A stretch of DNA of 63,576 bases, counting the filler, from Octopus bimaculoides (lineage: Eukaryota), in the NCBI RefSeq assembly GCF_001194135.2. It is 7 parts of 7 records of this genome, joined end to end, with 100 filler letters (N's around TTAATTAATTAA, not from the genome) between each part and the next. Parts side by side here need not be neighbours in the genome. Positions count along the whole stretch, not along the records: positions 11,260 to 29,087 come from NC_068988.1; positions 29,188 to 37,001 come from NC_068981.1; 5 more parts are not named here. One strand, 5' to 3'. The translations under genes and the position numbers were made by a program. The notes under the pieces are model-generated. The model did not search any database and had not been told where the DNA came from. It saw nothing but the letters and a program-made list of their open reading frames with translations. Shown here piece by piece: positions 13,606-29,202 of this stretch; position 1 is the stretch's first letter, and every line of letters starts with the position of its first letter.

Positions 13606-13700
13606 ATGCAACGTTACTCATTCTGTTTTTTTTCTCTCGCAGTCATCAGTACCTTCAATTGCATGGCACTTCAGTAATTAGCATCTTTAGATACGAAACG

Positions 13701-14035
13701 GAGGCGCAATGGCCCAGTGGTTAGAGCAGCGGACTCGCGGTCATAGGATCGCAGTTTCGATTCCCAGACCGGGCGTTGTGAGTGTTTATTGAGCGAAAAC
13801 ACCTAAAGTTCCACGAGGCTCCGGCAGGGGATGGTGGTGAACCCTGCTGTACTCTTTCACCACAACTTTCTCTCACTCTTACTTCCTGTTTCTGTTGTGC
13901 CTGTAATTCAAAGGGTCAGCCTTGTCAAACTGTGTCACGCTGAATATCCCCGAGAACTACGTTAAGGGAACACGTGTCTGTGGACTGCTCAGCCACTTAC
14001 ACGTTAATTTCACGGGCAGGCTGTTCCGTTGATCG
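13701..14035 (+). mobile_element. tRNA-derived SINE family A (my label)
   Basis: A-box TGGCCCAGTGG and B-box GTTTCGATTCC; near-identical copies at 17082-17372 (+) and 18630-19020 (-); partial or diverged copies near 24225, 41530-41720, 48320-48450 and 61800-61870. Confidence 0.9.
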
Positions 14036-16367
14036 TAACCGACAGAATGNNNNNNNNNNNNNNNNNNNNNNNNNNNNNNNNNNNNNNNNNNNNNNNNNNN
14101 NNNNNNNNNNNNNNNNNNNNNNNNNNNNNNNNNNNNNNNNNNNNNNNNNAAACACAGATCTTTTATATATCAAGTAATGCAAATTACAATTCATCTATTT
14201 TTGGTTACTTATAGTTTCTTGGTAAAACAGTAATATATCTATTTCAGTCTTTGTCTATATTTTGAAGAACACATGGCTAAATAGAAAGATTCTTCGTTTG
14301 GTTAATAGCTTTATAGCAAGAAATCATATTGTAATCAGAACAAATCAGTTATAATTCCTATTACTTTATCTGCCTGTACATTATTTTGCATACGTCTCAC
14401 AAGAGTCAATACTTTTTAATACACACATATACGTGTTTACACACATACATATTTACATACATAAACACTGATAGATTAGCACACATGTCTGTTCACAGTC
14501 GCGCGATATATAATCACAAAAAGAATCTACTTGAATTTAATAGGAGTAAAATGTTTTGTGATATGGCTATTGTCTGCCCGAAGCGATTCAAAACTTAGAG
14601 TTCTCACAAAAACAAATGCTAAAATTGCCTATAATTGCTAGGGTGGAATTCTGTTTCTACAAACAGCAGTCCGAAGCAAATGGCGTGGAGATAGCAGTTT
14701 ACCCGCAAGCAAACGGAAATTGGCCGTTGATTGGGTGCACAATATACATCTAGCTTGTGTATATTTATATACTATTTTTCCATTTGATTATTTCAATTCT
14801 TGCTTCTCTATAGTAGGAACTGGTTTTAGTCAAAGAGACAAACCTCTTTCAGCGGGTATTAAGTAACAACATCGGTGAGTGTTTACACGTATTTTAGAAA
14901 TAGTTTCTTAATTCACTTACAGATTGAATTTGCGAAGTGTGTATTTGCGAAAAGGACTAATACTTGGTGTTTGTATAAAAATCCCCTACATTTCCGAGTT
15001 GTCATTTAAATATTCAGTAACATAGCCTATGCACCAATAATTATATAAATGTGAATATTTTCTGGATAGAAAAGCTGGTATCATCTTTGCACTTGTCCAT
15101 AATTATGGTATTTATGATTGATTTTGATAAAATTTTATTCACAAATAAAGGATAAGTCTTAAACAGCTTAAGCATATTATGTATGCATCTGGCGCAAGAT
15201 TTAATGGGAATGTTACACCAGTATTTTTTGAGTTGAAACGTTAGTATGTATTCAACAACAGACGTTTTACGACATTTATTCTGAGTAAGTCTGTGCATAG
15301 CATTGTATTTTGTTTTGACAACAACATTAAGCCGCATTAGGAAGTTGTGCGTTAAGGACATCTTTGAGCAGCTGTTGATGACGTGTAATATCCTCGACAG
15401 AAAAATAACATAATCAATATGTTTAGTCGCATCTAGGGGTTCAAAGACTACTGTCTCTTTTGTCCAATAGACATTTTGTAGCTGTCAATTGTTCTTGAAG
15501 TGCAGTAGTATAGCATTCGAATGTGACATGTGTGATAGTTACATATCCAAAGCGAGAATAGACACCCTGCGAATATTAGCGTTACCTTTGTCCGTCTTTA
15601 CGTTTTGATTTCAGATTCTGCCGAGGTCGTCTTTGCTTTCCATCCTTTTGGGGTCGATGAAATAATACCAGTTCAGTAGGGATGTCGATGTAATCGACTT
15701 ACCCACTCCCCCGAAATTGCTAGCCTTATGCCAAAATTTGAAACCAATATTAGCATCACCTCTAAGTTTATGGGGAAAATGTCATTTATAATAATTGTTT
15801 GTTATACTGAGTGTTTCTCATTCAAATTTTTGTTAAGTTGACCTAGCAAAGTTTTGTATACACTTGACTATCGGGTTAAATATATTGTGGCATTGAAATC
15901 CTTCAAGAGTGATTTCAACACTCTGTATTGATATTTTTGTTAAACGCAGTCTTTTGATCAACAGAAATCGAAAATATAAGTAGCAGACAAAACGACCAAA
16001 TATATCATAATTAAATAAAAATCTTTCGACAGAATATTTTATCATGGCTGCTGGTAAAAAACTCAATCACTAAAATAAGATGATAAATACATATAAATTT
16101 ATATGCATGTATGCATGCATGTATGTATGTATGTATGTATGTACATACATATATCCATACATATGCATACATACATACATACATACATGCATACACACAC
16201 ACACACACATATGAATATATATATACATATATATATATATGTAGTTATAATTTCCTTTCGAAACACAGTGTAGAAGTGCTCAAGTCGAAACTGAGCCTTT
16301 AGATAAGTATTATTGATACAATAGAAAACGTTCAACTCAGGCAGACTACTATTAACACACATTTTCA

Positions 16368-17069
16368 GGTTTAGTTAAAATAAAATAAGAACTATTCAAG
16401 CTGAAACATATATCAATTTATTAGAGATATACTATATATAGAAATATAAAAATATATGAATGCTAAAAATATACATTGACATACAAATATACAGATATAT
16501 AAACATAATAATAATCGAATATAAATAAAAATAATAATGGAATATAGATAAAAAAACGTTTTAAAAAATTAAAATATGGTATAGAGAAAGTAATAGGGAT
16601 TAAAAAGAATTTTCGTTTACATGTTAGAAGAAAATAAAGTATTCCAACGATCGTTTCTGAAGTTCATTCGTCCAAATTAGAGATGAATCTTAAGATCCAT
16701 TTTCAGAGAATGCCTCCTTCATCAAGGAAAACTGATGTTTACGCTAGATATGCATTCAGTTCTTTACAAGGTAACTCCAGAAACGATCGTTGGAATACTT
16801 TATTATCTTCTAACATGTCACCCAAAATTCTTTTAATGCCTATTACTTTATACTATATTTTAATTCTTTAAATAGTTTTTAAAAAAAATCTATATTCCAT
16901 TATCATTTTAATTTATATTCCGTTATTATTATGTTTGTATATCTATATATCTATATGTCCACGTATATTTTTAGTAATCATCTATTTTTATATTTCTATA
17001 TTTTTTATATCTCTAATATATCAATATATGTTTCAGCTTGGACAATTCTTATTTTATCTTAACCAAACC
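16368..17069. repeat. Foldback element with approximately 297-bp inverted arms and a 108-bp spacer
   Basis: 16368-16664 is the imperfect reverse complement of 16773-17069, e.g. acatgttagaagaaaataaagtattccaacgatcgtttctg versus cagaaacgatcgttggaatactttattatcttctaacatgt. Confidence 0.9.
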
Positions 17070-17846
17070 CGTTCATGTGTAGAGGCGCAATGGTCCAGTG
17101 GTTAGGCCAGCGGACACACAGTCGGAGGATCGCAGTTTCGATTCCCAAACCGGGCGTTGCGTGTGTTTATTGAGCAAAAACACCTAAAGCTCCACGAGAC
17201 TCCGACGAGACTCCCCTGTTGTACTCTTTCACCCAAACTTTCTCTCACTCTTTCTTCTTGTTTCATGAGTAAAGCTGCGATAGACTGGCGTCCCGTCCGG
17301 CTGGGTGGGGGACACACACGCCATAGAAACCGGGAAACCGGGCCCATGAGCCAGGCTAGGCTTTAAAAGGGCGAAAAAAAACAACAACCCTATTTATGTA
17401 TGTGTTAATCGTAGTCTACCTGATTTTAACTTTTCTATTGTATGAATTAAACTTACACACACATACACACATATGCATGTGTGTATGTATACATACATTT
17501 GTGCAAGTATATGTGTATCTTAACTAGCTGGATTCGAAACCACGAAGTTTCGGATTCAGTTTCATTGTACGAGACCTTGTAAGCAGACCTGGTGAAAACT
17601 GCTCTGAATGTATGTTTGTGTATACGAACAAATATCTAAACATCAATACATATACGTGTATTTATATGTATGTGTGTGTCTGCAACACCGTTTTACAACA
17701 GGTGTTGTTTTGTTGCTCTCCCCGTTAAGCATAAAAACAAAAGATATCAGAATAAGTACAAGTCTTATAAAACAAGTATTTTGGGGTCGATTTGATAAAG
17801 TAAATCCTTGAAGGCTGTGCACCAGTATGGCTATAGTTGAAAGAGT

Positions 17847-18629: not shown

Positions 18630-19020
18630 ATTGTTGTTGGCACTCCGGCGCTTACGACGTCGAGGGTTCCAGTCGATCCGATCAACGGAACAGCCTGCTC
18701 GTGAAATTAACGAGCAAGTGACTGAGCACTCCACAGACACGTGTAGCCTTAACGTAGTGCTCGGGGATATTCAGCGTGACACAGTGTGACAAGGCTGACC
18801 CTTTGAATTACAGGCACAACAGAAACAGGAAGTAAGGGTGAGAGAAAGTTGTGGTGAAAGAGTACAGCAGGGTTTGCCACCCCCACCCCCCACTGCCGGA
18901 GCCTCGTGGAACTTTAGGTGTTTTCGCTCAATAAACACTCACAACACCCGGTCTGGGAATCGAAACCGCGATCCTATGACCGCGAGTCCGCTGCCCTAAC
19001 CACTGGTTCATTGCGCCTCC
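18630..19020 (-). mobile_element. SINE family A, near full-length copy
   Basis: Reverse complement of 13701-14035 with an additional 3' tail. Confidence 0.9.
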
Positions 19021-19270
19021 ACTGCTACAGCAGTAGGTAACCCACGTAGCTCAGGTAGCTGAAATACCTCCAACAGAACACTTTCCTACCGGATTCGATA
19101 TTGATTTCTGCATTCGGTGACGGAGTACACCCGCATTAATTTGCACAAGGGTATCTATCACAAGTATCCCTTCTTAACAAAGAACTATGGCAAATAGCGA
19201 ATTATTGAAACAAGCTCATCTTCCACCTCTCGTGTGAGTAACACGCACACACACACATACNNNNNNNNNN

Positions 19271-19755: not shown

Positions 19756-22289
19756 GTATGTATGTTATCAATCAGTTTCATTTCTGTATTTCTTGTCAAT
19801 AGAGAAAGAACCGGACTCTAACATAGATTCAAGGCTCCTTCATTGGAACTTTTATCAACATCATCTAGGTATTTGTGCATGTGTGTGAGTGTGTGTGNNN
19901 NNNNNNNNNNNNNNNNNNNNNNNNNNNNNNNNNNNNNNNNNNNNNNNNNNNNNNNNNNNNNNNNNNNNNNNNNNNNNNNNNNNNNNNNNNNNNNNNNNNN
20001 NNNNNNNNNNNNNNNNNNNNNNNNNNNNNNNNNNNNNNNNNNNNNNNNNNNNNNNNNNNGTGTGTGTGTGTGCAGTATTTAGTGTTAGTGTATGCACAGA
20101 TTTGTATGTTTGTTTTATGGATGCGTTTTTATGTATATATTTTCATGTCTAGATGCATGCATATATATTTATATGCTAAATTTTTGGAAAGTTTTACAAA
20201 CCTTTACAGTTCCATTGATGGCTTGAATCTGTAGTCTTCTAATTAACCTTTATGTATGCATGTATGTATGTATGTATGTATGTATGTATGTATGTATGTA
20301 TGTATGTTTTCTTTCTAATTCAGAGTAAATTCTGACCGATTACCTACTTGGTAGCAAGGTTTTGAAGGAAAGTATCTTGATTTAACGAACATCTTTTAAA
20401 TTTTAAGAAGGCCTTGAAGATTTTTAAAGCTCCAGATATTGTGATCATTTGTAGCATATGAATTAAGGGTTTGCATTCTCTCCCACACTTTGCACTAGAC
20501 TGGTTGGTATGCATCTTATTGCTCCAATAATAATAACTGTCATGTATGTATGTATGTATGCATGCATGTTAGTCTTATTTTTAGATTTCATGCCATTGGA
20601 GAAAGAACCAGTTTCTAACCTAGATCTAAGTTTCTTTCATTGGGATGTCGACATTATCAACACTCTCTTGGTACATGCTTTTGTGTTTGTGTTCAAGTAT
20701 TTGGTGTCAGTGCCTGTGCAGGTTTGTCTGTCTAACTGTCGATATGTTATTCAGTTTTATTTCAAGATTTCTTGCCAACAGAAGAGCCTGTTTCTAACCT
20801 AGATCTAAAGCTCCTTCATTAGGTTTTCAATATCAACAGGGTGTTTTTATATGTTTGTATATGTGCAGTATTTGGAGTCAATTTATGTATGTATGTATGT
20901 ATGGATGTATGTATGTATGTATGTATGTATGTATGTATGTATGTATGTATGTAGATTAAATATTATGTCACATTCGAGGTTATTCGAATGTGAGTGTTAC
21001 AGGTGACTGTAAACCAGTACCGCCTTGTTTGTTTATCGGTAACTTAATCAACGAGGTTTAATCTGGTGAGGAGGGTTGCTAGATAGACCAGAGAACAAAC
21101 ATGAGCTGTCAAAAGATCGAATGTACCTAGTACAGAGTCAATCATTGTCTCATAATGTGAACTCGGAGACAGAAATACCGGAAATGTTGGAGAAGCACAC
21201 TCTGTGACCACTGGAAGCGATGCAAATCTCCAATGTTGATTTCTGTGAAAAAGTTATGATCTCGAAGTTCTAACACCTATGTAGTGCCTCATCGGGGTAG
21301 GTAGTGCACCTTTCATTGCTACAGCAGTTAATACATCTCGGATATGGTACGTCCAAAATAGGCATGAACTTCCTCCTGCAGAGAGAAAGCAATTACAAAT
21401 ATTGTCAATAATAATATACCGGAAAGATATGCTTTATGTTTCCTACAGTGAAATAAGCGGAAATAACGATTAATACTAACTTCGATAAACTCAGCAACAG
21501 ATAAGTAGATAGAGCAGCAGATAAAAAACAAGAAAAGGAACGTTAAACAAATAAAGGAACTGATATTAACTGTCAAAAGACAACATATAAAGACGAAAAT
21601 ATTGAATGTGAATGAAATCATAGATTCCGTGGAATTCGTTTTTTTTTATTCAATGCACAAACGAGATTTCTCAATGTGAACTTTATCGATTTAACTATAA
21701 TCTAGCTTTAAGCCATTTAGTTTATTGTTCAGAATTTCCTAGTAATTTGGCATCTAAAATTGTTGAAAGGAAATTATAGAAATTTTCACAAAAGATATAA
21801 ACTACTAAGAACTAAACTAAATTGAAACAACAATATTTCTGTCTGTATGTCTGCCTTTCTGATCTTCTTACTCCTCCCAGTCATACTCTTTCGATCTAGC
21901 CCATATATATATGTAACCTCCTTCTCGCTACATTATTACATAATACTCTGGTTTCAAATTTAAATACACTCCAGAAAACAAGTTTTTGGTATAGTCTTAG
22001 TTTGAAACAGCCATACAGACTGTGTGTGTGTGAGTGAATGTGTGCGTGTATATACACACACACACATACACACACATATACGCATATATAAGTATGTATA
22101 TGTTTATGTATCTTTGTTTGTCTCTGTCTTTCTCTCTCTCTATATATGTATATATCCCGCCTTGCCTCATCGCTCCTTTGGCCTTCATGTCTATAAATAT
22201 AAACTCATACATATATAGACACATACAAATATAAGCACATAAATATACATACATAAATATAAACACACATGTGTATATAAAAACACATC

Positions 22290-23060
22290 CAGCGTGGGTC
22301 AAAAGTGAAGTACCAAAATGTCGGACGCCATGCACATCGAGGCGATCGGGTTCGCTCTAAAGGAATGTGATGCGGTGACAGGATCGAAGATTAACCGGGG
22401 CAAATCAGTAGGCCTACAACTCAGCACCTGGGTGGCAGGTCTATATCGTCCAACATGCGTTGTAGGGCGCTGGACAGACGGACCGGTTAAGCTACTCGGG
22501 GTATGGTTCGATCCAGACCTCCAAGTGGACAAGAACTGGCACGAGGTAATGATCAGGGTAGCCAAACTCACCCAGAAATGAGAGAAAACTGTCCCTGAAA
22601 GGTCGGAGAAAAGTGGAGAACGCGTATATCGCACCAGTCCTCTATTATTGTCTGACAGTCGTGCCTTGCCCCGAGTCACGCCTGAACGAGTTGGAGCGTA
22701 TACTCTTTTGCTTTCTGTGGAGGGGACGTATTGCTCTTGTCAGGCAGTCAATCTGCTGTCAACAGCCGCTGGACAGAGGGCTGAGCATGCCATGGTTGCC
22801 GATGCGCAAGCAGGCACTGAGGCTGCGGCATCTCCAGTTTTTCCTTAACGGTGAGCAGGTGTGATCACCCTTTGTTAAATGCGCTTTTCCTTAAGTCGTT
22901 TCCTTAACGGACTGCAACCCTGGGTCAAGCTGATACTGAGGGAGGGCGAGTGGCACCTTGAGTGCCTACAAGCCCTCTTAGTCATCTTAGACCTCTTAGT
23001 CGGGCAATGCTGTCGGTGGAAATTCTACCTTGGAGTTCCGTAGGGGATTAGTGTCGTAAC
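22290..23060 (+). mobile_element. Decayed L1/Tx1-clade LINE, RT fragment
   Basis: TGSKINRGKSVG ... VKLLGVWF ... KNW ... LSLKGR (DNA ctgtccctgaaaggtcgg) ... LFCFLWRG ... RGLSMP; broken by stops. Confidence 0.85.
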
Positions 23061-25604
23061 TCTATGGATGATGTGTAATACTGTGTAAACTTGAGAGCAG
23101 CAGTCTGCGATATGATAACAGTTGTACGTGGCACAGATCGCATGGTTTGGATTGTCTACCCTACGATCTTTACGTATCCAAGCAAGGCAGGCTGGCAGAA
23201 TCGTTAGCATGCCGGGCAAAACGGCGGGCATTTCGTCCGTCTTTATCTTCTGAGTTCAAATTTCACCGAGGTCGACCTTGCTTTTAGTCCTTTCGGGTTC
23301 GATAAAATAAGCAACAACTAAGCACTGGAGTCGATGTAATCGACTAACCCACTCGCGCAAAATTTCAGGCCTTGTGCCTATACTAGAAAAGATTATAATT
23401 ATTATTAACGTTATTATTGTTGTTATTGTTGTTGTTATCGTTGTTGTCATTATCTTCACGTGAAATATCTTCACCTCAGATCAACAACTAATGGTGAGCG
23501 ATAAACGAATATTCTTACAAATAACTTAATGTCAGTTATTATTAATTCCAATTGAGACATCTTTTAATTTGTTCTCGTAGATGAGGTGTCTTGATTAAAG
23601 TATGTGAAAGAAAAATAGGGAAAGGCATCGGAGAGGAATTCGATGAATGATGTGTTTTAACTATTCTCCACTGATCTTATTTTATTATTTTACATAGTCA
23701 CAAATGGAGCTGCCATTTTCTTTGCCTTTTTGTGGGGCTCCCGAGACTGTTCGATCAACTTAAAGTTTTATTATTCTATACCATGGGGGCTGTGGTGAAG
23801 GCAAACAGAGCAGTTAAGCTTGGCGACGTATTCAGTAATGATATATAAGTGGTTTTGAAGAATTATGTTCTTATTTAGGTTCCAAGAGCTTGGAACAGCA
23901 TGTTATGGTGAAAACTATTATATATCATAACGAGGAATAAGTGAGAAAGACATTAAATGTAGTGACAGTGACAGCTACTTGCAGTCGTTCAAAATATCAT
24001 TTCTCTTCGTATGATAAAACCCTGATGATTCACTAAGCAAATTCCGCTTTAGATGCTTTAATAATGAAGTATGGCCGCCGATAAAGACAATATGACATGA
24101 CAATATGACAGAGGAGACAGAGTTATATATTGATAGTTATTAAAAGAACGGTCAATAACTCCGCTTTTATATTTATACAGAATTATATTGCAAACTTGTC
24201 ATTAATATAAACACAGCGCAGGATAACCGAATGGTTTAGAAGAGTGCTTTGCAACTACGAGGTGCTAGGGTCGATCCTACATCATGGCATCTTGGGCAGA
24301 ATCTATTTAATACAACCTCAGACCGACCCACATTTTGAAGGTGATATTGAGTAGATAGAAACTGTATCAAACTTGTTGGCTGGGTTGTACCTGTAATTTA
24401 AAGGTACAAATTGTCACACACTGTGATATAACACGATCACATACATACATACATACATACATCTCAGTATATCCTTAATCTGTGTTTTGTACCCTATTTC
24501 AGTTACTGATATAAATTCCCATATAGACATCATATCCATATCCGAACCCATGCTTGATACTAAGATACCCCAACGATACAGTTACCGATACACTCATATA
24601 CATCTTGTTATCCTCGCTATGGGTTTTCCTCTTACTACAACTATATGATCTTTTTCTGTACCTCTAAACTAGCTACTGTTCGTATGTAGACGCATCTCCG
24701 ACCGTCGAACCGAGGAGGTTTATCTAGTCCTCCTTAAGGAAGGCTGACGACTTGCGTCCGTGACTATATTCAATCTAGATGCAGTGTATGGCCAAGATGT
24801 CTTACTTTACCTCGCTTTATACTCTGCTCTCTACAATGCATTGCTGCAGTCACTTTCTACTCCGCTGAATCATTAAGGTTTCTTCCACAAAGTCTGCCAG
24901 ATTCAATCCTCACATGTATAATGTAGGCAAGCCCTATCATACTAATTAATCCATAGCTGGGACCTTGACAAGTGCTGCTACTCTGAGTCAGAGCAGACCT
25001 GAGAAAGCTAAACGTAGGCATATACATACACACAATACACATACAAAATTCACATAAACATACACATACACACAAATCGCTTTCGCTCATTCACATACAC
25101 ATACGCACACTCAATCCAAATTCTTCTGTCTCTTCCTACACATCCATATGGTGGCCCACCAAATATACTGCCGAACTCACAATTTCCTTTCAGACAACGA
25201 ACAACTGAGCTTCTATTTGATTTCTTAACCCAGATGGTCATGTAAAGTCAAAAATGGCATTCCTCACTAACAAGTAAACACAAGATATACACGTGACTAC
25301 ATATGAGTACATCACTGTGTGTATGCGTAATGAACACTTACCAAAATGTTTAGTATACATTTTTAGTATGCATATTTCTATAAATCTACATACATATATT
25401 TGTATATACATATACAAACACATGCACAAACACAAACACAGGCACACATACATTCACAGACACATTCAGACTTATAAACACAGACACATAAATAACTACG
25501 CAAGTGTATGTGCCCGACTGTAGACGGGACTATATCGTATAATTGTGAATTATGCACCAACACGTTTTATATACAAAGAAAGATGCAAACATATACATTT
25601 ACAA

Positions 25605-25681: not shown

Positions 25682-25759
<78 letters not shown>

Positions 25760-25766
25760 CATATAC

Positions 25767-25798
<32 letters not shown>

Positions 25799-26487
25799 TT
25801 ATATATAGAGAGTGATACAGACAGACACACATATGTACATGCTTGCATCCATAGCATTTTCTAATAATCGAGGAAAATTAAATGCTAACAAAATGCACCG
25901 TTCATTGTATTTTGTTATTAAAGATATTAATTGAAGAAGTACATTTTAGAAAATAAGACCTCATCAAAAGTTTTTAAGAGAGCGTAAACTTATAATATAG
26001 TTTACTAACAAACTCCGATAAAATTCGATTAAGATTCTTCAATATATATACTCAGTAAATTTCAATTAAATCAGAAAAGAGTCTAGAAGAGATTATATAA
26101 ATAAACTTTCTGTAATAGAAAATCATGCTGTAGAATATAATTTTATCGTTCCTGCTCACTTTTCTTGTTTGTATTTTGCTATATACATTTTAATGCTTTA
26201 AGAAGGTTGAAATGTCAATGTAGTGTCTTTTGACTCTCAACAATTGTTCTGTGGATATTAGTTTCCAGTTCCTTTTTTTTTATCATTAACCTTAGTTTCA
26301 TTTATGTGTCTTTATTTGCTTGTATTCTCGTGTTGTCTCCCAGCCACTACATTTCACTACATATATTACATTCATAGATAATCATGTATATATATGCATG
26401 TGTATATATATATATGTATATATATACATGCATATACATGCACATGTATGCATGCACACATAGATACATACATATATATATAGCATC

Positions 26488-26519
<32 letters not shown>

Positions 26520-26612
26520 GTACATACATGTGATACATAGCACCGTATGTATATGCATACATATGACGAGAAAGAGAGAGAGAGAAATAGAGAGAGAGGG
26601 AGAGAAAGAGAA

Positions 26613-26649
<37 letters not shown>

Positions 26650-26659
26650 NNNNNNNNNN

Positions 26660-26691
<32 letters not shown>

Positions 26692-26989
26692 GAGAAAAGA
26701 GAGAGAGAGGGAAAGAGAAGGACGTCTATGTCTATTGGTGTGTTTATGTGTTTTCATTATCCATTGTATTTGTGGATTATATGCAAAAACAGTCCTGCGC
26801 ATATTTGCATATATGTGTGTATGTGTGTTTGTGTGTTTGTGTGTGAGTGCGTGTGTGTGTTTATGTGTGTGAGCGGAACAAGCGTGAAGAAACTTTTATG
26901 TATATGTATGTATATATATATATATATATATGTATGTATACAAAAAAATAACATGCAGTTCAATGCTATGACATTTCAGGCCCTCCATT

Positions 26990-27720
26990 ATCAGCCCAAC
27001 ACCAGGCTAAAGTCAGAATACACTGGAACAGAAGATAATATGATGCCAGAGCCAGGATCGGTGCGTGACCGGGGGGTTCACATGAGCAATGATGCAACAT
27101 TTCCTGTTCATATTACCAAGAGGGCAACACTGCAGGCGAATGGTTGTATGGGTTCTGAAAACATTCAGAAGCAGGAAAAGGGGAGGCTCTGCTACTCCTA
27201 TGGAAGACTTTCGTTCTTAGCCGCTTGGACTACTGCTCCCAACTATGGTCCCCCAGAGAGTGTGAAACAAACTGGAGAACTCGAAGCAATCCAGCGCCAA
27301 TATACAAAGAAGATTGACTCGATGCAAATGATGGGCAACTGAGAGAGGCTAAAGGAGCTGTGTCTCTATTCCCTGGAGAGGAGACGAGAGAGATAAATAT
27401 ATGGAAGATCTTGGAGGGTTTAGATCCCAATTTTGGAATTGACAGCTATACCAATCCTCGAACTGGACGGCACACCAAAAATCCCGTCTTCCCCATCTAA
27501 AATAAGGACACAGTACTGCAATAGTTTGGGTTTAAAGGACCCGCAGTTGTTCAACATTCTTCCAGGCAACCTTTGAGATCTACATGGTATTGATGTGGAA
27601 GTTTTCAAGGAACGGCTGAACAGGTTTCTATCTGAGATAACAGATGAACCCACATCGAGGCAGGGGACGCAGAGAAGAGCAGCTCTGTCTAACTCGCTAC
27701 TTCACCAAAAACAATACTGG
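26990..27720 (+). mobile_element. Decayed CR1/Jockey-like LINE, 3' end
   Basis: ELEAIQRQYTKKI ... ERLKELCLYSLERRRE ... WKILEGLDPNFGI ... QLFNILP ... FKERLNRFLSEITDEP ... SNSL. Confidence 0.85.
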
Positions 27721-28516
27721 AAACAACACCGAGTAACTACAGGTGTTGCACCAGCATGACCTCAGCCCTTGGCTGAAACCATCTGTGGGAAAAGATGCAG
27801 CAATTCCAGATGTGGATACTGTAACCGCAATCTGCCTGATTGAACAAAGTTTTTGCCAAAATTAGGTTGATCAGAAAAGTTTTATCGTTTCTGTCAGAAG
27901 CTTCAGGGAAAAATATTCCTCCGCGCCAAATGTCACCCATTTTTCGTGACATATGTATAAGCTAATTTATCATTTGGAACGAAATGTAAGTAATTTTGGG
28001 GAAGATACTGTTTTAATTCTTGAATGTCAGAGCTAGTTATCTCAAGGCTCTCTCGACTGAGAGTTGCACAGTTCACGCTAGAACTGGTTACTCGCACTCC
28101 TCAAGATCCTTGTATTGTATTGTATTATGTATACAACACAATCGATTGCATCGTATTTTCAATGAGATTCAGTAATATTGAAGGGAGAGCTTACTTGATT
28201 AAGCAGGACCTACTGCTTGACAGGAACTTTATTTTATCGAACCAGAGGGATGAACGGCGAACATTTCCTTGGGGATGGAAGATGGAGCTTACTTGAACTC
28301 AGAAAGTAAAACTTCATGAACTAAATACTGCTAGATACTTTGTCCGTCATCTAGAGAATCTGCCGTTCCATCACCCTCTATAATTAAAATATTATTAATT
28401 AATTGTCGTTTCAGCTGACTATTAAATATTTAAAATTGAATTTTAGTCGGTTAATTTATTTAGATTAAATCATTATGCTAAATCTATTTTTTGTTATTTC
28501 TTCCTTTTCTTTTCAG

Positions 28517-28583
28517 GTAAGTTCTTGCTTCTGCCGAAGAAACTATCTTAATTGCTTCAAACGAGTGTCTTAATTAACTTCAG
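28517..28583 (+). other. Candidate recursive splice site plus 67-nt RS-exon
   Basis: Branch-like tgctaaat, long pyrimidine tract and cag immediately followed by gtaagt (28517); a second cag|gtaagt at 28584. Confidence 0.55.
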
Positions 28584-29202
28584 GTAAGTTATTTATAAAT
28601 CATACCTTAATTAAATTCTTTTGAACTATTTTGTGGAAGTAGTGGAGTAGACTCCATGACTTAGAGGTGTCTCCATGAAGGGTGCGGATGAACTATTTAT
28701 GATGTATTCGTTCAAATTCCTCTAATACAGTGGTTCAAATAATTAGTTCAAATTCCTCTAATACAGGGGACTCATTTGCAAGGGATGTTAAAAATTGGAG
28801 GGCAATGTTGATGCATGTAGAAGATTAAGCCCCCACATACTTTATGTGAACCCAGGTTTATTGATAAGGAGGGAATCAACGCAACGCAACAGTATTAGAA
28901 GTCAAATTTAAGTTTTGCATAATCCTTCAAATTCTCACAGGACTATAAAACAAAATCATTGACCATACATTTGCACCTACCTGACTAAAGTGGACACACA
29001 CTTACACACACACACAGTTATTGTATAATCAGTTATAATCACATTTATTGTATAATCAGTTATAGTATTCACTATATTTAGGTATTANNNNNNNNNNNNN
29101 NNNNNNNNNNNNNNNNNNNNNNNNNNNNNNNTTAATTAATTAANNNNNNNNNNNNNNNNNNNNNNNNNNNNNNNNNNNNNNNNNNNNAGAGAGAGAGAGA
29201 GA

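What the first reader, a model, noticed from the sequence alone, without database searches (positions are those of the whole stretch)
28470..28590. Candidate recursive splice site (AG|GTAAGT ratchet point) with a 67-nt RS-exon
Seen: a strong 3' splice site (tgctaaat, then tttttttgttatttcttccttttcttttcag) directly abuts a perfect donor GTAAGT at 28517, and a second perfect CAG|GTAAGT follows 67 nt later. Known: this double arrangement is the architecture of recursive splicing in long Drosophila and vertebrate introns. Inference: it sits on the strand of the NDRG-like gene, in a stretch of more than 40 kb with no recognisable coding exon. The 67-nt segment is not a multiple of 3, so inclusion would act as a poison/NMD exon. 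I am not aware of recursive splicing being characterised in molluscs.
Basis: partly seen in the sequence, partly recalled or inferred. Interest (0 to 1): 0.7.

Follow-up and report, generated by a model that had tools for sequence, protein, structure and literature searches.

The report
Candidate recursive splice site in octopus DNA
A textbook-perfect "acceptor fused to donor" splice signal, followed 67 bases later by a second perfect donor, really is present in this octopus-type DNA and is far too specific to be chance. Nothing available here shows that the strand is transcribed, so it remains a good but unproven candidate for step-wise (recursive) intron removal.

Summary
On the + strand there are 17/17 pyrimidines at -20..-4, TT at -6/-5, and CAG|GTAAGT (AG 28515-16, GT 28517). 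A second CAG|GTAAGT has its GT at 28584, which bounds a 67-nt segment with stop codons in all three frames. These are the only two CAGGTAAGT 9-mers on either strand of the 17.8-kb piece. A random-sequence model predicts about 0.004-0.13 such composites per 2.7-Gb genome.

It is not a 67-nt tandem duplication. It lies about 700 nt past the 3' end of a LINE fragment and about 100 nt past a degraded SINE. It has no copy in the piece or in 45 kb of other cephalopod DNA, and it has no Rfam or structural signal.

Every sequence-level criterion of fly and vertebrate ratchet points with RS-exons is met. One feature is atypical: the downstream donor is as strong as the ratchet donor.

The piece holds no recognisable exon on either strand, so host gene, strand, RNA evidence and conservation were untestable.

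Best reading: an RS-exon module in an unidentified long intron (confidence about 0.45). If real, it is a new member of a known kind.

The parts
28476..28483 (+). Candidate branch-point region (tgctaaat). The candidate branch A is about 35 nt upstream of the AG. It is an imperfect match to YNYURAY.
   Evidence: No strict YNYTRAY lies in 28440-28516. The AG-free zone 28464-28514 is consistent with use of the 28515-16 AG.
28484..28513 (+). Polypyrimidine tract: 27/30 Y overall, 17/17 Y at -20..-4, TT at -6/-5.
   Evidence: A tract this strong (>=27/30 Y) precedes only 0.03% (+ strand) to 0.6% (- strand) of positions in the piece.
28514..28522 (+). Ratchet-point motif CAG|GTAAGT: a 3' splice site fused to a consensus 5' splice site, with the junction at 28516|28517.
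28517..28583 (+). 67-nt candidate RS-exon (cryptic or poison). It is not a multiple of 3 and has stops in all three frames. GC is 0.36 against 0.18-0.19 upstream. It contains GAAGAA, and TCTTAAT branch-like motifs at 28546 and 28568.
28581..28589 (+). Second consensus donor CAG|GTAAGT (junction 28583|28584). Formally it is also an AG|GT site, but with a weak acceptor context (10/17 Y, CT at -6/-5).
   Evidence: It shares the 12-mer TTCAGGTAAGTT with the first site.

Best explanation
This is a splice-signal module on the + strand of an octopod genome, best read as an intronic ratchet point with its RS-exon.

Proposed mechanism (inferred, not shown):
1. During transcription of a long intron, the 67-nt segment is recognised by exon definition. 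U2AF/U2 bind the very strong acceptor ending at 28516, and U1 binds the consensus donor at 28584.
2. The upstream exon is spliced to 28517. This recreates a consensus donor (xxx|GTAAGTT) at the new junction.
3. The regenerated donor competes with the donor at 28584 for the next acceptor. If the regenerated donor wins, the 67 nt leave with the rest of the intron (zero-nucleotide recursive splicing). If the 28584 donor wins, a 67-nt frame-shifting, stop-containing exon is included (a poison or NMD isoform, or a UTR variant).

Because the two donors are equally strong, partial inclusion is plausible.

What is shown: the motifs, their extreme improbability by chance, that they do not come from a tandem duplication, and that they lie outside the adjacent LINE and SINE. 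What is inferred: that the + strand is transcribed, that the site lies in a long intron, and that either junction is used.
For: - The motif and coordinates are exact.
- The only two CAGGTAAGT in 35.6 kb of strand-sequence sit 67 nt apart on the same strand. The first site appears in 0/100 shuffles. The chance expectation is well below one per genome (from figures).
- TT at -6/-5 plus a prominent Y tract matches 196/197 fly ratchet points (10.1101/006163). The consensus (y)nncag|gtaagt is given in PMC2773006.
- A short out-of-frame cryptic exon of about 50 nt with a downstream donor is the defined RS-exon architecture (PMC8605326).
- The 17/17 Y tract argues that the AG is a real acceptor rather than incidental sequence inside a first exon.
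- GTAAGT at exon positions +1..+6 has P of about 2-3e-4 by chance. This argues against an ordinary cassette exon.
- The exon is GC-richer than its upstream flank and carries a GAAGAA enhancer-type hexamer.
- It is not a period-67 duplication: identity is 26% outside the shared 12-mer, against a background of 30+-3%.
- It is outside the LINE, whose homology stops at 27779, and outside the SINE at 28200-28378.
- There is no second copy in the piece, in 45 kb of cephalopod DNA, or in the metagenome, genome and viral collections.
Against: - There is no evidence that the + strand is transcribed or that the site lies in an intron. No Pfam hit was found in any ORF >=45 aa on either strand. Masked strand skews are about 0.
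- The neighbouring LINE and SINE fragments are in the same (+) orientation. By analogy with mammals only, this is the less common orientation inside introns.
- The downstream donor is as strong as the ratchet donor. In flies the ratchet donor is usually the stronger one (PMC8605326).
- No strict branch-point consensus is present.
- Conservation, a hallmark of fly ratchet points, could not be examined.
- Membership of a low- or medium-copy repeat cannot be excluded with the DNA available.
- The shared 12-mer could reflect a small duplication event rather than two independently selected sites.
Confidence: 0.45

Rival explanations
1. Non-functional sequence. The motif pair is a product of mutation or duplication (for example a 12-bp direct repeat TTCAGGTAAGTT flanking a 55-bp insertion), or it is part of an unrecognised low- or medium-copy repeat. 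It lies in untranscribed DNA or antisense to a gene and is never spliced.
For: The two sites share a 12-mer, not just the 9-mer consensus. The piece is dominated by TEs and microsatellites. No exon and no strand asymmetry were found. All 16 metagenome loci with the doubled 12-mer are tandem repeats, which shows that duplication is the usual source of such pairs. Repeat status could be checked against only about 63 kb of cephalopod DNA.
Against: Apart from the 12-mer, the period-67 register is at background identity. There are no inverted repeats or TIRs in 28300-29087. No other copy was found anywhere. A duplication would explain the second donor, but not why the duplicated site is a 17/17-Y acceptor fused to a perfect donor, for which only about 14-170 are expected per genome. 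A 55-bp insert with a 12-bp target duplication matches no recognised element here.
Confidence: 0.3
2. An ordinary short exon: a non-coding, UTR or poison cassette exon at 28517-28583, spliced conventionally. The GTAAGT at its 5' end would be incidental, or repressed so that no re-splicing occurs.
For: A strong acceptor and a strong donor lie 67 nt apart, with an exon-like GC step and GAAGAA. With two equal donors, use of the downstream one (inclusion) is plausible. Hundreds of annotated vertebrate exons begin with a donor-like sequence that the EJC keeps silent (PMC6224609 abstract).
Against: A perfect GTAAGT at +1..+6 has P of about 2-3e-4 by chance. Stops in all frames and a length that is not a multiple of 3 rule out a normal coding exon. 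No ORF or domain support exists nearby.
Confidence: 0.15
3. The first exon of an unannotated transcript, with two alternative donors at 28516|17 and 28583|84. Transcription would start near 28410, downstream of a TATA-like ctataat at about 28379.
For: A TATA-like motif at 28379 and a TCAGCT initiator-like motif about 34 nt downstream were read by eye.
Against: It leaves the 17/17 pyrimidine tract with TT at -6/-5 and CAG immediately before the first donor unexplained, and a tract of that strength precedes <1% of positions. TATA-like strings are common in 18%-GC DNA. No CpG or GC rise typical of promoters is present.
Confidence: 0.04
4. The 67 nt form a mini-intron (GTAAGT ... TCTTAAT branch with its A at 28551, 32 nt before CAG 28583), or a twin ratchet. 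Its removal regenerates the same CAG|GTAAGT junction.
For: The segment starts with GTAAGT and ends with YCAG. It has a perfect YNYURAY match at a canonical distance. Both boundaries are AG|GTAAGT.
Against: The second acceptor has a weak Y tract (10/17, CT at -6/-5). The flanking 'exons' would be a pyrimidine tract and AT-rich non-coding sequence. No precedent was retrieved.
Confidence: 0.03
5. A small-RNA gene, for example a spliced-leader-like or snRNA-related sequence, suggested by the donor plus an Sm-site-like AUUUUGUGG at 28628. A variant is a U1-related sequence on the minus strand (ACTTACCTG).
For: An Sm-like motif lies 44 nt after the second donor. ACTTACCTG is the U1 5' end read on the minus strand.
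Against: An Rfam scan at E<=1 finds nothing here. Folds are no better than shuffles, with z of +0.6 and +0.7. No tandem copies are present. To my knowledge, SL trans-splicing is not known in molluscs.
Confidence: 0.01

Closest known systems
Drosophila intronic ratchet points with cryptic RS-exons (Burnette 2005; Duff et al. 2015, preprint 10.1101/006163; Joseph et al. 2018 and 2021, PMC8605326)
   Same: (Y)n NCAG|GTAAGT, a prominent pyrimidine tract, and TT at -5/-6. The cryptic exon is short (about 50 nt; here 67 nt), out of frame and stop-containing, and is bounded by a downstream donor.
   Different: The downstream donor is a perfect consensus, equal to the ratchet donor, whereas in flies the ratchet donor usually wins by strength. 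The host intron, constitutive use and the ultraconservation typical of fly sites are unknown here. The organism is an octopod mollusc.
Vertebrate RS-exons (Sibley et al. 2015; Blazquez et al. 2018, PMC6224609)
   Same: Recursion begins with definition of an RS-exon through its downstream 5' splice site. Inclusion of the RS-exon gives a frame-disrupted, NMD-prone isoform. Donor competition decides the outcome.
   Different: Vertebrate cases were established from RNA data in specific long neuronal genes. No RNA data or gene assignment is available here.
Poison or decoy exons in long introns (for example PMC7373989)
   Same: A short non-coding exon with good splice sites that is recognised but normally does not end up in productive mRNA.
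   Different: Poison and decoy exons do not need a donor fused to their acceptor. The perfect AG|GTAAGT is the feature specific to recursion.
Intronic high-affinity U1-binding elements (for example the mod(mdg4) TSA element, PMC4387717)
   Same: Perfect 9-nt complementarity to the U1 5' end at an intronic position.
   Different: Those elements are not preceded by a strong acceptor and do not come with a second donor at exon-like spacing.

Membership tests
Recursive splice site (ratchet point) with RS-exon | Juxtaposed acceptor and donor matching (y)n ncag|gtaagt | tested here: met
   TTTCTTCCTTTTCTTTTCAG|GTAAGT with the junction at 28516|28517. The consensus is taken from PMC2773006.
Recursive splice site (ratchet point) with RS-exon | Prominent pyrimidine tract with TT at -5/-6 (196/197 fly ratchet points) | tested here: met
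   17/17 Y at -20..-4, and T at both 28511 and 28512. The criterion is from 10.1101/006163.
Recursive splice site (ratchet point) with RS-exon | A short cryptic exon bounded by a downstream 5' splice site (about 50 nt in flies) | tested here: met
   The second CAG|GTAAGT has its GT at 28584, giving a 67-nt exon. The criterion is from PMC8605326.
Recursive splice site (ratchet point) with RS-exon | RS-exon content is generally out of frame or carries a premature stop | tested here: met
   67 = 3x22+1, and there are stops in all three frames.
Recursive splice site (ratchet point) with RS-exon | The regenerated ratchet donor outcompetes the RS-exon donor (for cryptic, fully skipped RS-exons) | tested here: inconclusive
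   Both donors read GTAAGTT. Positions -3..-1 of the regenerated donor depend on an unknown upstream exon. Equal strength predicts mixed outcomes.
Recursive splice site (ratchet point) with RS-exon | Located in a long intron (>10 kb in flies) on the sense strand of an expressed gene | not testable with these tools
No exon is recognisable in the 17.8-kb piece (Pfam 0 hits). Strand skews are about 0. Exact-ORF look-ups were not on record.
Recursive splice site (ratchet point) with RS-exon | Conservation of the ratchet motif in related species, with a poorly conserved exon body | not testable with these tools
   No orthologous sequence could be retrieved. The metagenome two-anchor scan gave only unrelated tandem repeats. 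Scans of the genome and viral collections gave 0 hits. Only one unrelated Octopus vulgaris locus could be fetched.
Recursive splice site (ratchet point) with RS-exon | RNA evidence: saw-tooth coverage, junction reads into the ratchet point, recursive lariats | not testable with these tools
   The LINE ends at 27779 and the SINE-like copy ends at about 28378. There is no copy of 28380-28990 elsewhere in the piece or in 45 kb of cephalopod DNA. There are no TIRs. The sample is small, so low- and medium-copy families are not excluded.
Tandem duplication | Sequence similarity in the period-67 register beyond the shared motif | tested here: not met
   Identity is 26% excluding the 12-mer, against a background of 30+-3%.
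Known structured RNA (U1, SL RNA, other Rfam families) | A covariance-model match or a fold more stable than shuffles | tested here: not met
   There is no Rfam match at the site at E<=1. Fold z-scores are +0.59 and +0.71. ARAGORN finds 0 genes.

The most novel reading that the evidence does not exclude
The site is a genuinely used ratchet point in a long octopus intron. That would be the first recursive splicing documented in a mollusc or lophotrochozoan. It would also have an unusual twin design: two AG|GTAAGT junctions 67 nt apart. The 67 nt could then be discarded either by donor competition or as a self-regenerating mini-intron. Because the donors are equal, the module could also work as a tunable poison-exon switch.
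Probability: 0.12. Interest if true: 0.55.

Novelty: new member of a known kind. Interest (0 to 1): 0.33.

Why it matters
Recursive splicing is established in Drosophila and vertebrates, and ratchet-motif enrichment has been reported in a few other invertebrates (PMC2773006). The held literature contains no report for molluscs or cephalopods. Coleoid genomes have very long, repeat-filled introns, so how they splice them accurately is a fair question.

A validated ratchet point would extend the mechanism to Lophotrochozoa and give a concrete locus for testing. A specialist would largely expect this result. One motif-only candidate in an unidentified gene is a lead, not a discovery. Its main practical value is as a seed for a genome-wide sense-versus-antisense enrichment test in octopus long introns.

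Tried and rejected
1. Exact-ORF look-ups were made to pull this locus or longer contigs from public assemblies: 28024-28296, 28475-28573 and 26728-27342. None is on record.
2. The LINE-tail homolog search gave a best identity of 66%, on short ENA contigs. It was useful only for placing the LINE 3' end at 27779.
3. A SINE-peptide profile search, meant to harvest cephalopod loci, returned one Logan contig.
4. A rhodopsin search, meant to obtain cephalopod genomic DNA, yielded only two usable loci: Octopus vulgaris L021 and a decapodiform L022. This was enough to show the piece is octopod-like and to give a small background sample. It was too little for a real enrichment or repeat test.
5. The metagenome two-anchor scan found 16 loci, all unrelated tandem repeats. 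The genome contigs and viral contigs exact scans gave 0 hits.
6. The Pfam scan of all ORFs >=45 aa on both strands gave 0 families. A first attempt using raw DNA references failed because of stop codons.
7. Rfam, tRNA and folding checks for an snRNA or SL-RNA reading were negative.
8. Tandem duplication and TIR/MITE readings were rejected.
9. Strand-skew analysis as a proxy for transcription direction gave skews of about 0 and is uninformative.

Full report
**What is in the sequence.** Reading 28200-29143 and scoring positions confirms the finding to the base.
- On the + strand, the pyrimidine tract 28484-28513 has 27/30 Y. Positions -20..-4 are 17/17 Y, with T at both -6 and -5.
- The tract ends in CAG (28514-28516) and is directly followed by GTAAGT (28517-22).
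- A second CAG|GTAAGT has its junction at 28583|28584, so the enclosed segment is 67 nt.
- All three frames of the 67 nt contain a stop codon.
- 'tgctaaat' (28476-83) is a loose branch-point candidate about 35 nt upstream of the AG.
- There is no AG between 28464 and 28514, so the 28515-16 AG is the first one a scanning spliceosome would meet.
- The second site is also formally AG|GTAAGT, but its acceptor context is weak (10/17 Y, CT at -6/-5).

**Is it chance?**
- Y6NCAGGTAAGT occurs once in the window and in none of 100 dinucleotide-preserving shuffles.
- In the 17.8-kb piece, CAGGTAAGT, AGGTRAGT and YAGGTRAGT each occur exactly twice when both strands are counted. Both occurrences are these two sites.
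- Markov models of order 0-3 trained on the piece give P(CAGGTAAGT) = 1.3-3.9e-6 per position. Empirically, only 0.2-0.8% of positions are preceded by >=18/20 pyrimidines.
- My arithmetic from those figures gives roughly 14-170 single 'ratchet-like' sites per 2.7-Gb genome (both strands). It gives only about 0.004-0.13 composites with a second perfect CAGGTAAGT within 200 nt, and about 2e-10 for this piece.
- With relaxed definitions (>=16/20 Y, YAG|GTRAGT, any AGGTRAGT downstream), chance composites of the order of ten per genome are expected. So the general architecture is not unique, but this instance sits at the stringent extreme.
- A small empirical control agrees. In 45 kb of other cephalopod DNA there is no CAGGTAAGT on either strand, and the two YAGGTRAGT sites have poor pyrimidine tracts.

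**Could a mutational process have made it?**
- The two sites share a 12-mer, TTCAGGTAAGTT.
- Apart from that 12-mer, the period-67 register shows 26% identity against a background of 30+-3%. A 67-nt tandem duplication is therefore excluded, unless it is so old that only the splice motifs survived, which would itself imply selection.
- All 16 loci in the metagenome collection that carry the doubled 12-mer at similar spacing are obvious tandem repeats unrelated to this locus.
- There are no inverted repeats in 28300-29087.
- A 12-bp target-site duplication around a 55-bp insert remains formally possible, but it matches no recognised element.

**Surroundings.**
- The piece is typical repeat-rich octopod DNA. 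It has many microsatellites and several assembly gaps.
- Two LINE reverse-transcriptase C-terminal fragments lie on the + strand, at 22309-22861 and about 26950-27780.
- Copies of one SINE family lie at 15587-15750(-), 23232-23396(-), and as a degraded copy at 28200-28378(+).
- The same SINE occurs in an Octopus vulgaris chromosome locus (76-85% identity) and not in a decapodiform locus. The piece is therefore octopod-like.
- Homologs of the nearer LINE show that its ORF ends at ...SNSLLHQ.... DNA homology stops at 27779, where the related contigs run into their short A-rich tails.
- The splice module therefore lies about 700 nt beyond the LINE and about 100 nt beyond the SINE.
- Nothing in 28380-28990 recurs elsewhere in the piece or in the other cephalopod loci.

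**Host gene.** Within this piece:
- No ORF >=45 aa on either strand hits any Pfam family.
- Repeat-masked strand skews are essentially zero.
- There is no Rfam family or tRNA at or near the site.
- Attempts to reach the locus in public assemblies through exact ORFs failed.

Whether the + strand is transcribed, and whether the site sits in a long intron, is therefore unknown.

**Comparison with known recursive splicing.**
- The literature defines ratchet points as (y)nncag|gtaagt (PMC2773006).
[quoted passage not shown] They lie in introns of 11-133 kb and are much more conserved than other AG|GT sites (10.1101/006163).
- They are recognised through a short (about 50 nt), poorly conserved, generally out-of-frame cryptic RS-exon with its own downstream donor. 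Competition between the regenerated donor and the RS-exon donor decides skipping versus inclusion (PMC8605326).
- The vertebrate mechanism is the same in outline (PMC6224609 abstract).
- The present site meets every sequence-level criterion.
- It deviates in one respect: its downstream donor is as strong as the ratchet donor. That predicts partial inclusion of a frame-shifting, stop-containing exon rather than clean skipping.
- The defining contextual and functional criteria could not be tested here. These are a long sense-strand intron, conservation, and RNA intermediates.

**Weighing the readings.**
- First exon with two donors: this leaves the 17/17 pyrimidine tract unexplained.
- Ordinary cassette exon: this leaves the perfect GTAAGT at +1..+6 unexplained (P about 2-3e-4).
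- Small RNA: no model or fold supports it.
- 67-nt mini-intron or twin ratchet: the sequence allows it, with a TCTTAAT branch 32 nt before the second CAG. However, the second acceptor is weak.
- Non-function, from an unrecognised repeat or a small duplication in untranscribed or antisense DNA: this is the serious rival. I give it about 0.3, because the repeat and transcription tests could not be done properly.
- RS-exon module: about 0.45.
- Conventional non-recursive short exon: about 0.15.

**Novelty and interest.**
- Searches of the held literature found no paper connecting recursive splicing with cephalopods or molluscs beyond one incidental co-mention.
- If validated, this would be a new member of a known kind in a new phylum. 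That is expected by most specialists, given the conservation between flies and vertebrates and the motif enrichment reported in other invertebrates.
- As it stands it is a well-formed, statistically non-random candidate lacking any expression or conservation evidence. Interest is about 0.33.

Noticed in passing
window 26950-27780 (+): A frameshifted 3' fragment of a CR1/jockey-like LINE (ORF2 C-terminus ...LEAIQRQYTKKI...ERLKELCLYSLERRRER...FKERLNRFLSEITDEPT...SNSLLHQ). The nearest database relatives are only 63-66% identical and sit on short ENA metagenome contigs. DNA homology stops at 27779.
   Followed up: yes
window 22309-22861 (+): A second, unrelated LINE reverse-transcriptase tail fragment in two adjoining frames. 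It accounts for the GC-rich block (GC about 0.5) at 22260-23260.
   Followed up: no
window 15587-15750 (-), 23232-23396 (-), 28200-28378 (+): Three copies of one SINE family; the last copy is degraded. The family is also present in the Octopus vulgaris chromosome locus L021 (76-85% identity) and the Logan contig L019. It is absent from the decapodiform locus L022, which points to an octopod origin for the piece.
   Followed up: partly
window 13700-14035, 17079-17264, 18679-19022: A repeat family with three copies. 13700-14035 and 18679-19022 are inverted, 94% complementary and 4.6 kb apart, so they could form a long hairpin if co-transcribed. The element type was not identified, and ARAGORN finds no tRNA.
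   Followed up: no
window 16357-16549 / 16888-17080: A foldback pair of 193-nt arms, 85% complementary, separated by 338 nt. It resembles a MITE or foldback element.
   Followed up: no
window 14050-14149, 19261-19270, 19898-20059, 26650-26659: Runs of N (assembly gaps) inside the piece, mostly within microsatellites. This indicates a draft short-read assembly.
   Followed up: no
window 28706-28733 / 28742-28769 and 29013-29064: Just downstream of the finding there is a 28-nt direct repeat (93% identical, 36 nt apart) and a 27-nt tandem repeat (1.9 copies) at the edge of the piece. CTTAATTAA-like strings also recur at 28547, 28569 and 28606.
   Followed up: partly
window 28628-28636 (+): An Sm-site-like AUUUUGUGG lies 44 nt after the second donor, followed by small hairpins (TGGAGT..ACTCCA). 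Folding is no better than shuffles and there is no Rfam hit, so it is probably chance in AT-rich DNA.
   Followed up: yes
window 16100-16250, 25700-25810, 26380-26540 and others: Many sub-threshold Rfam hits (mir-297, mir-466, mir-5014 and others; best 69.6 bits against gathering scores of 75-101 for the strongest of them). All fall on TA/TG/CA microsatellites and are false positives.
   Followed up: yes
window 28383, 28421, 28464, 28610 (+): Four ATTAAA poly(A)-signal-like hexamers on the + strand flank the two perfect U1-complementary sites. If the strand is transcribed, the U1 sites could also protect against premature cleavage. This was not tested.
   Followed up: no
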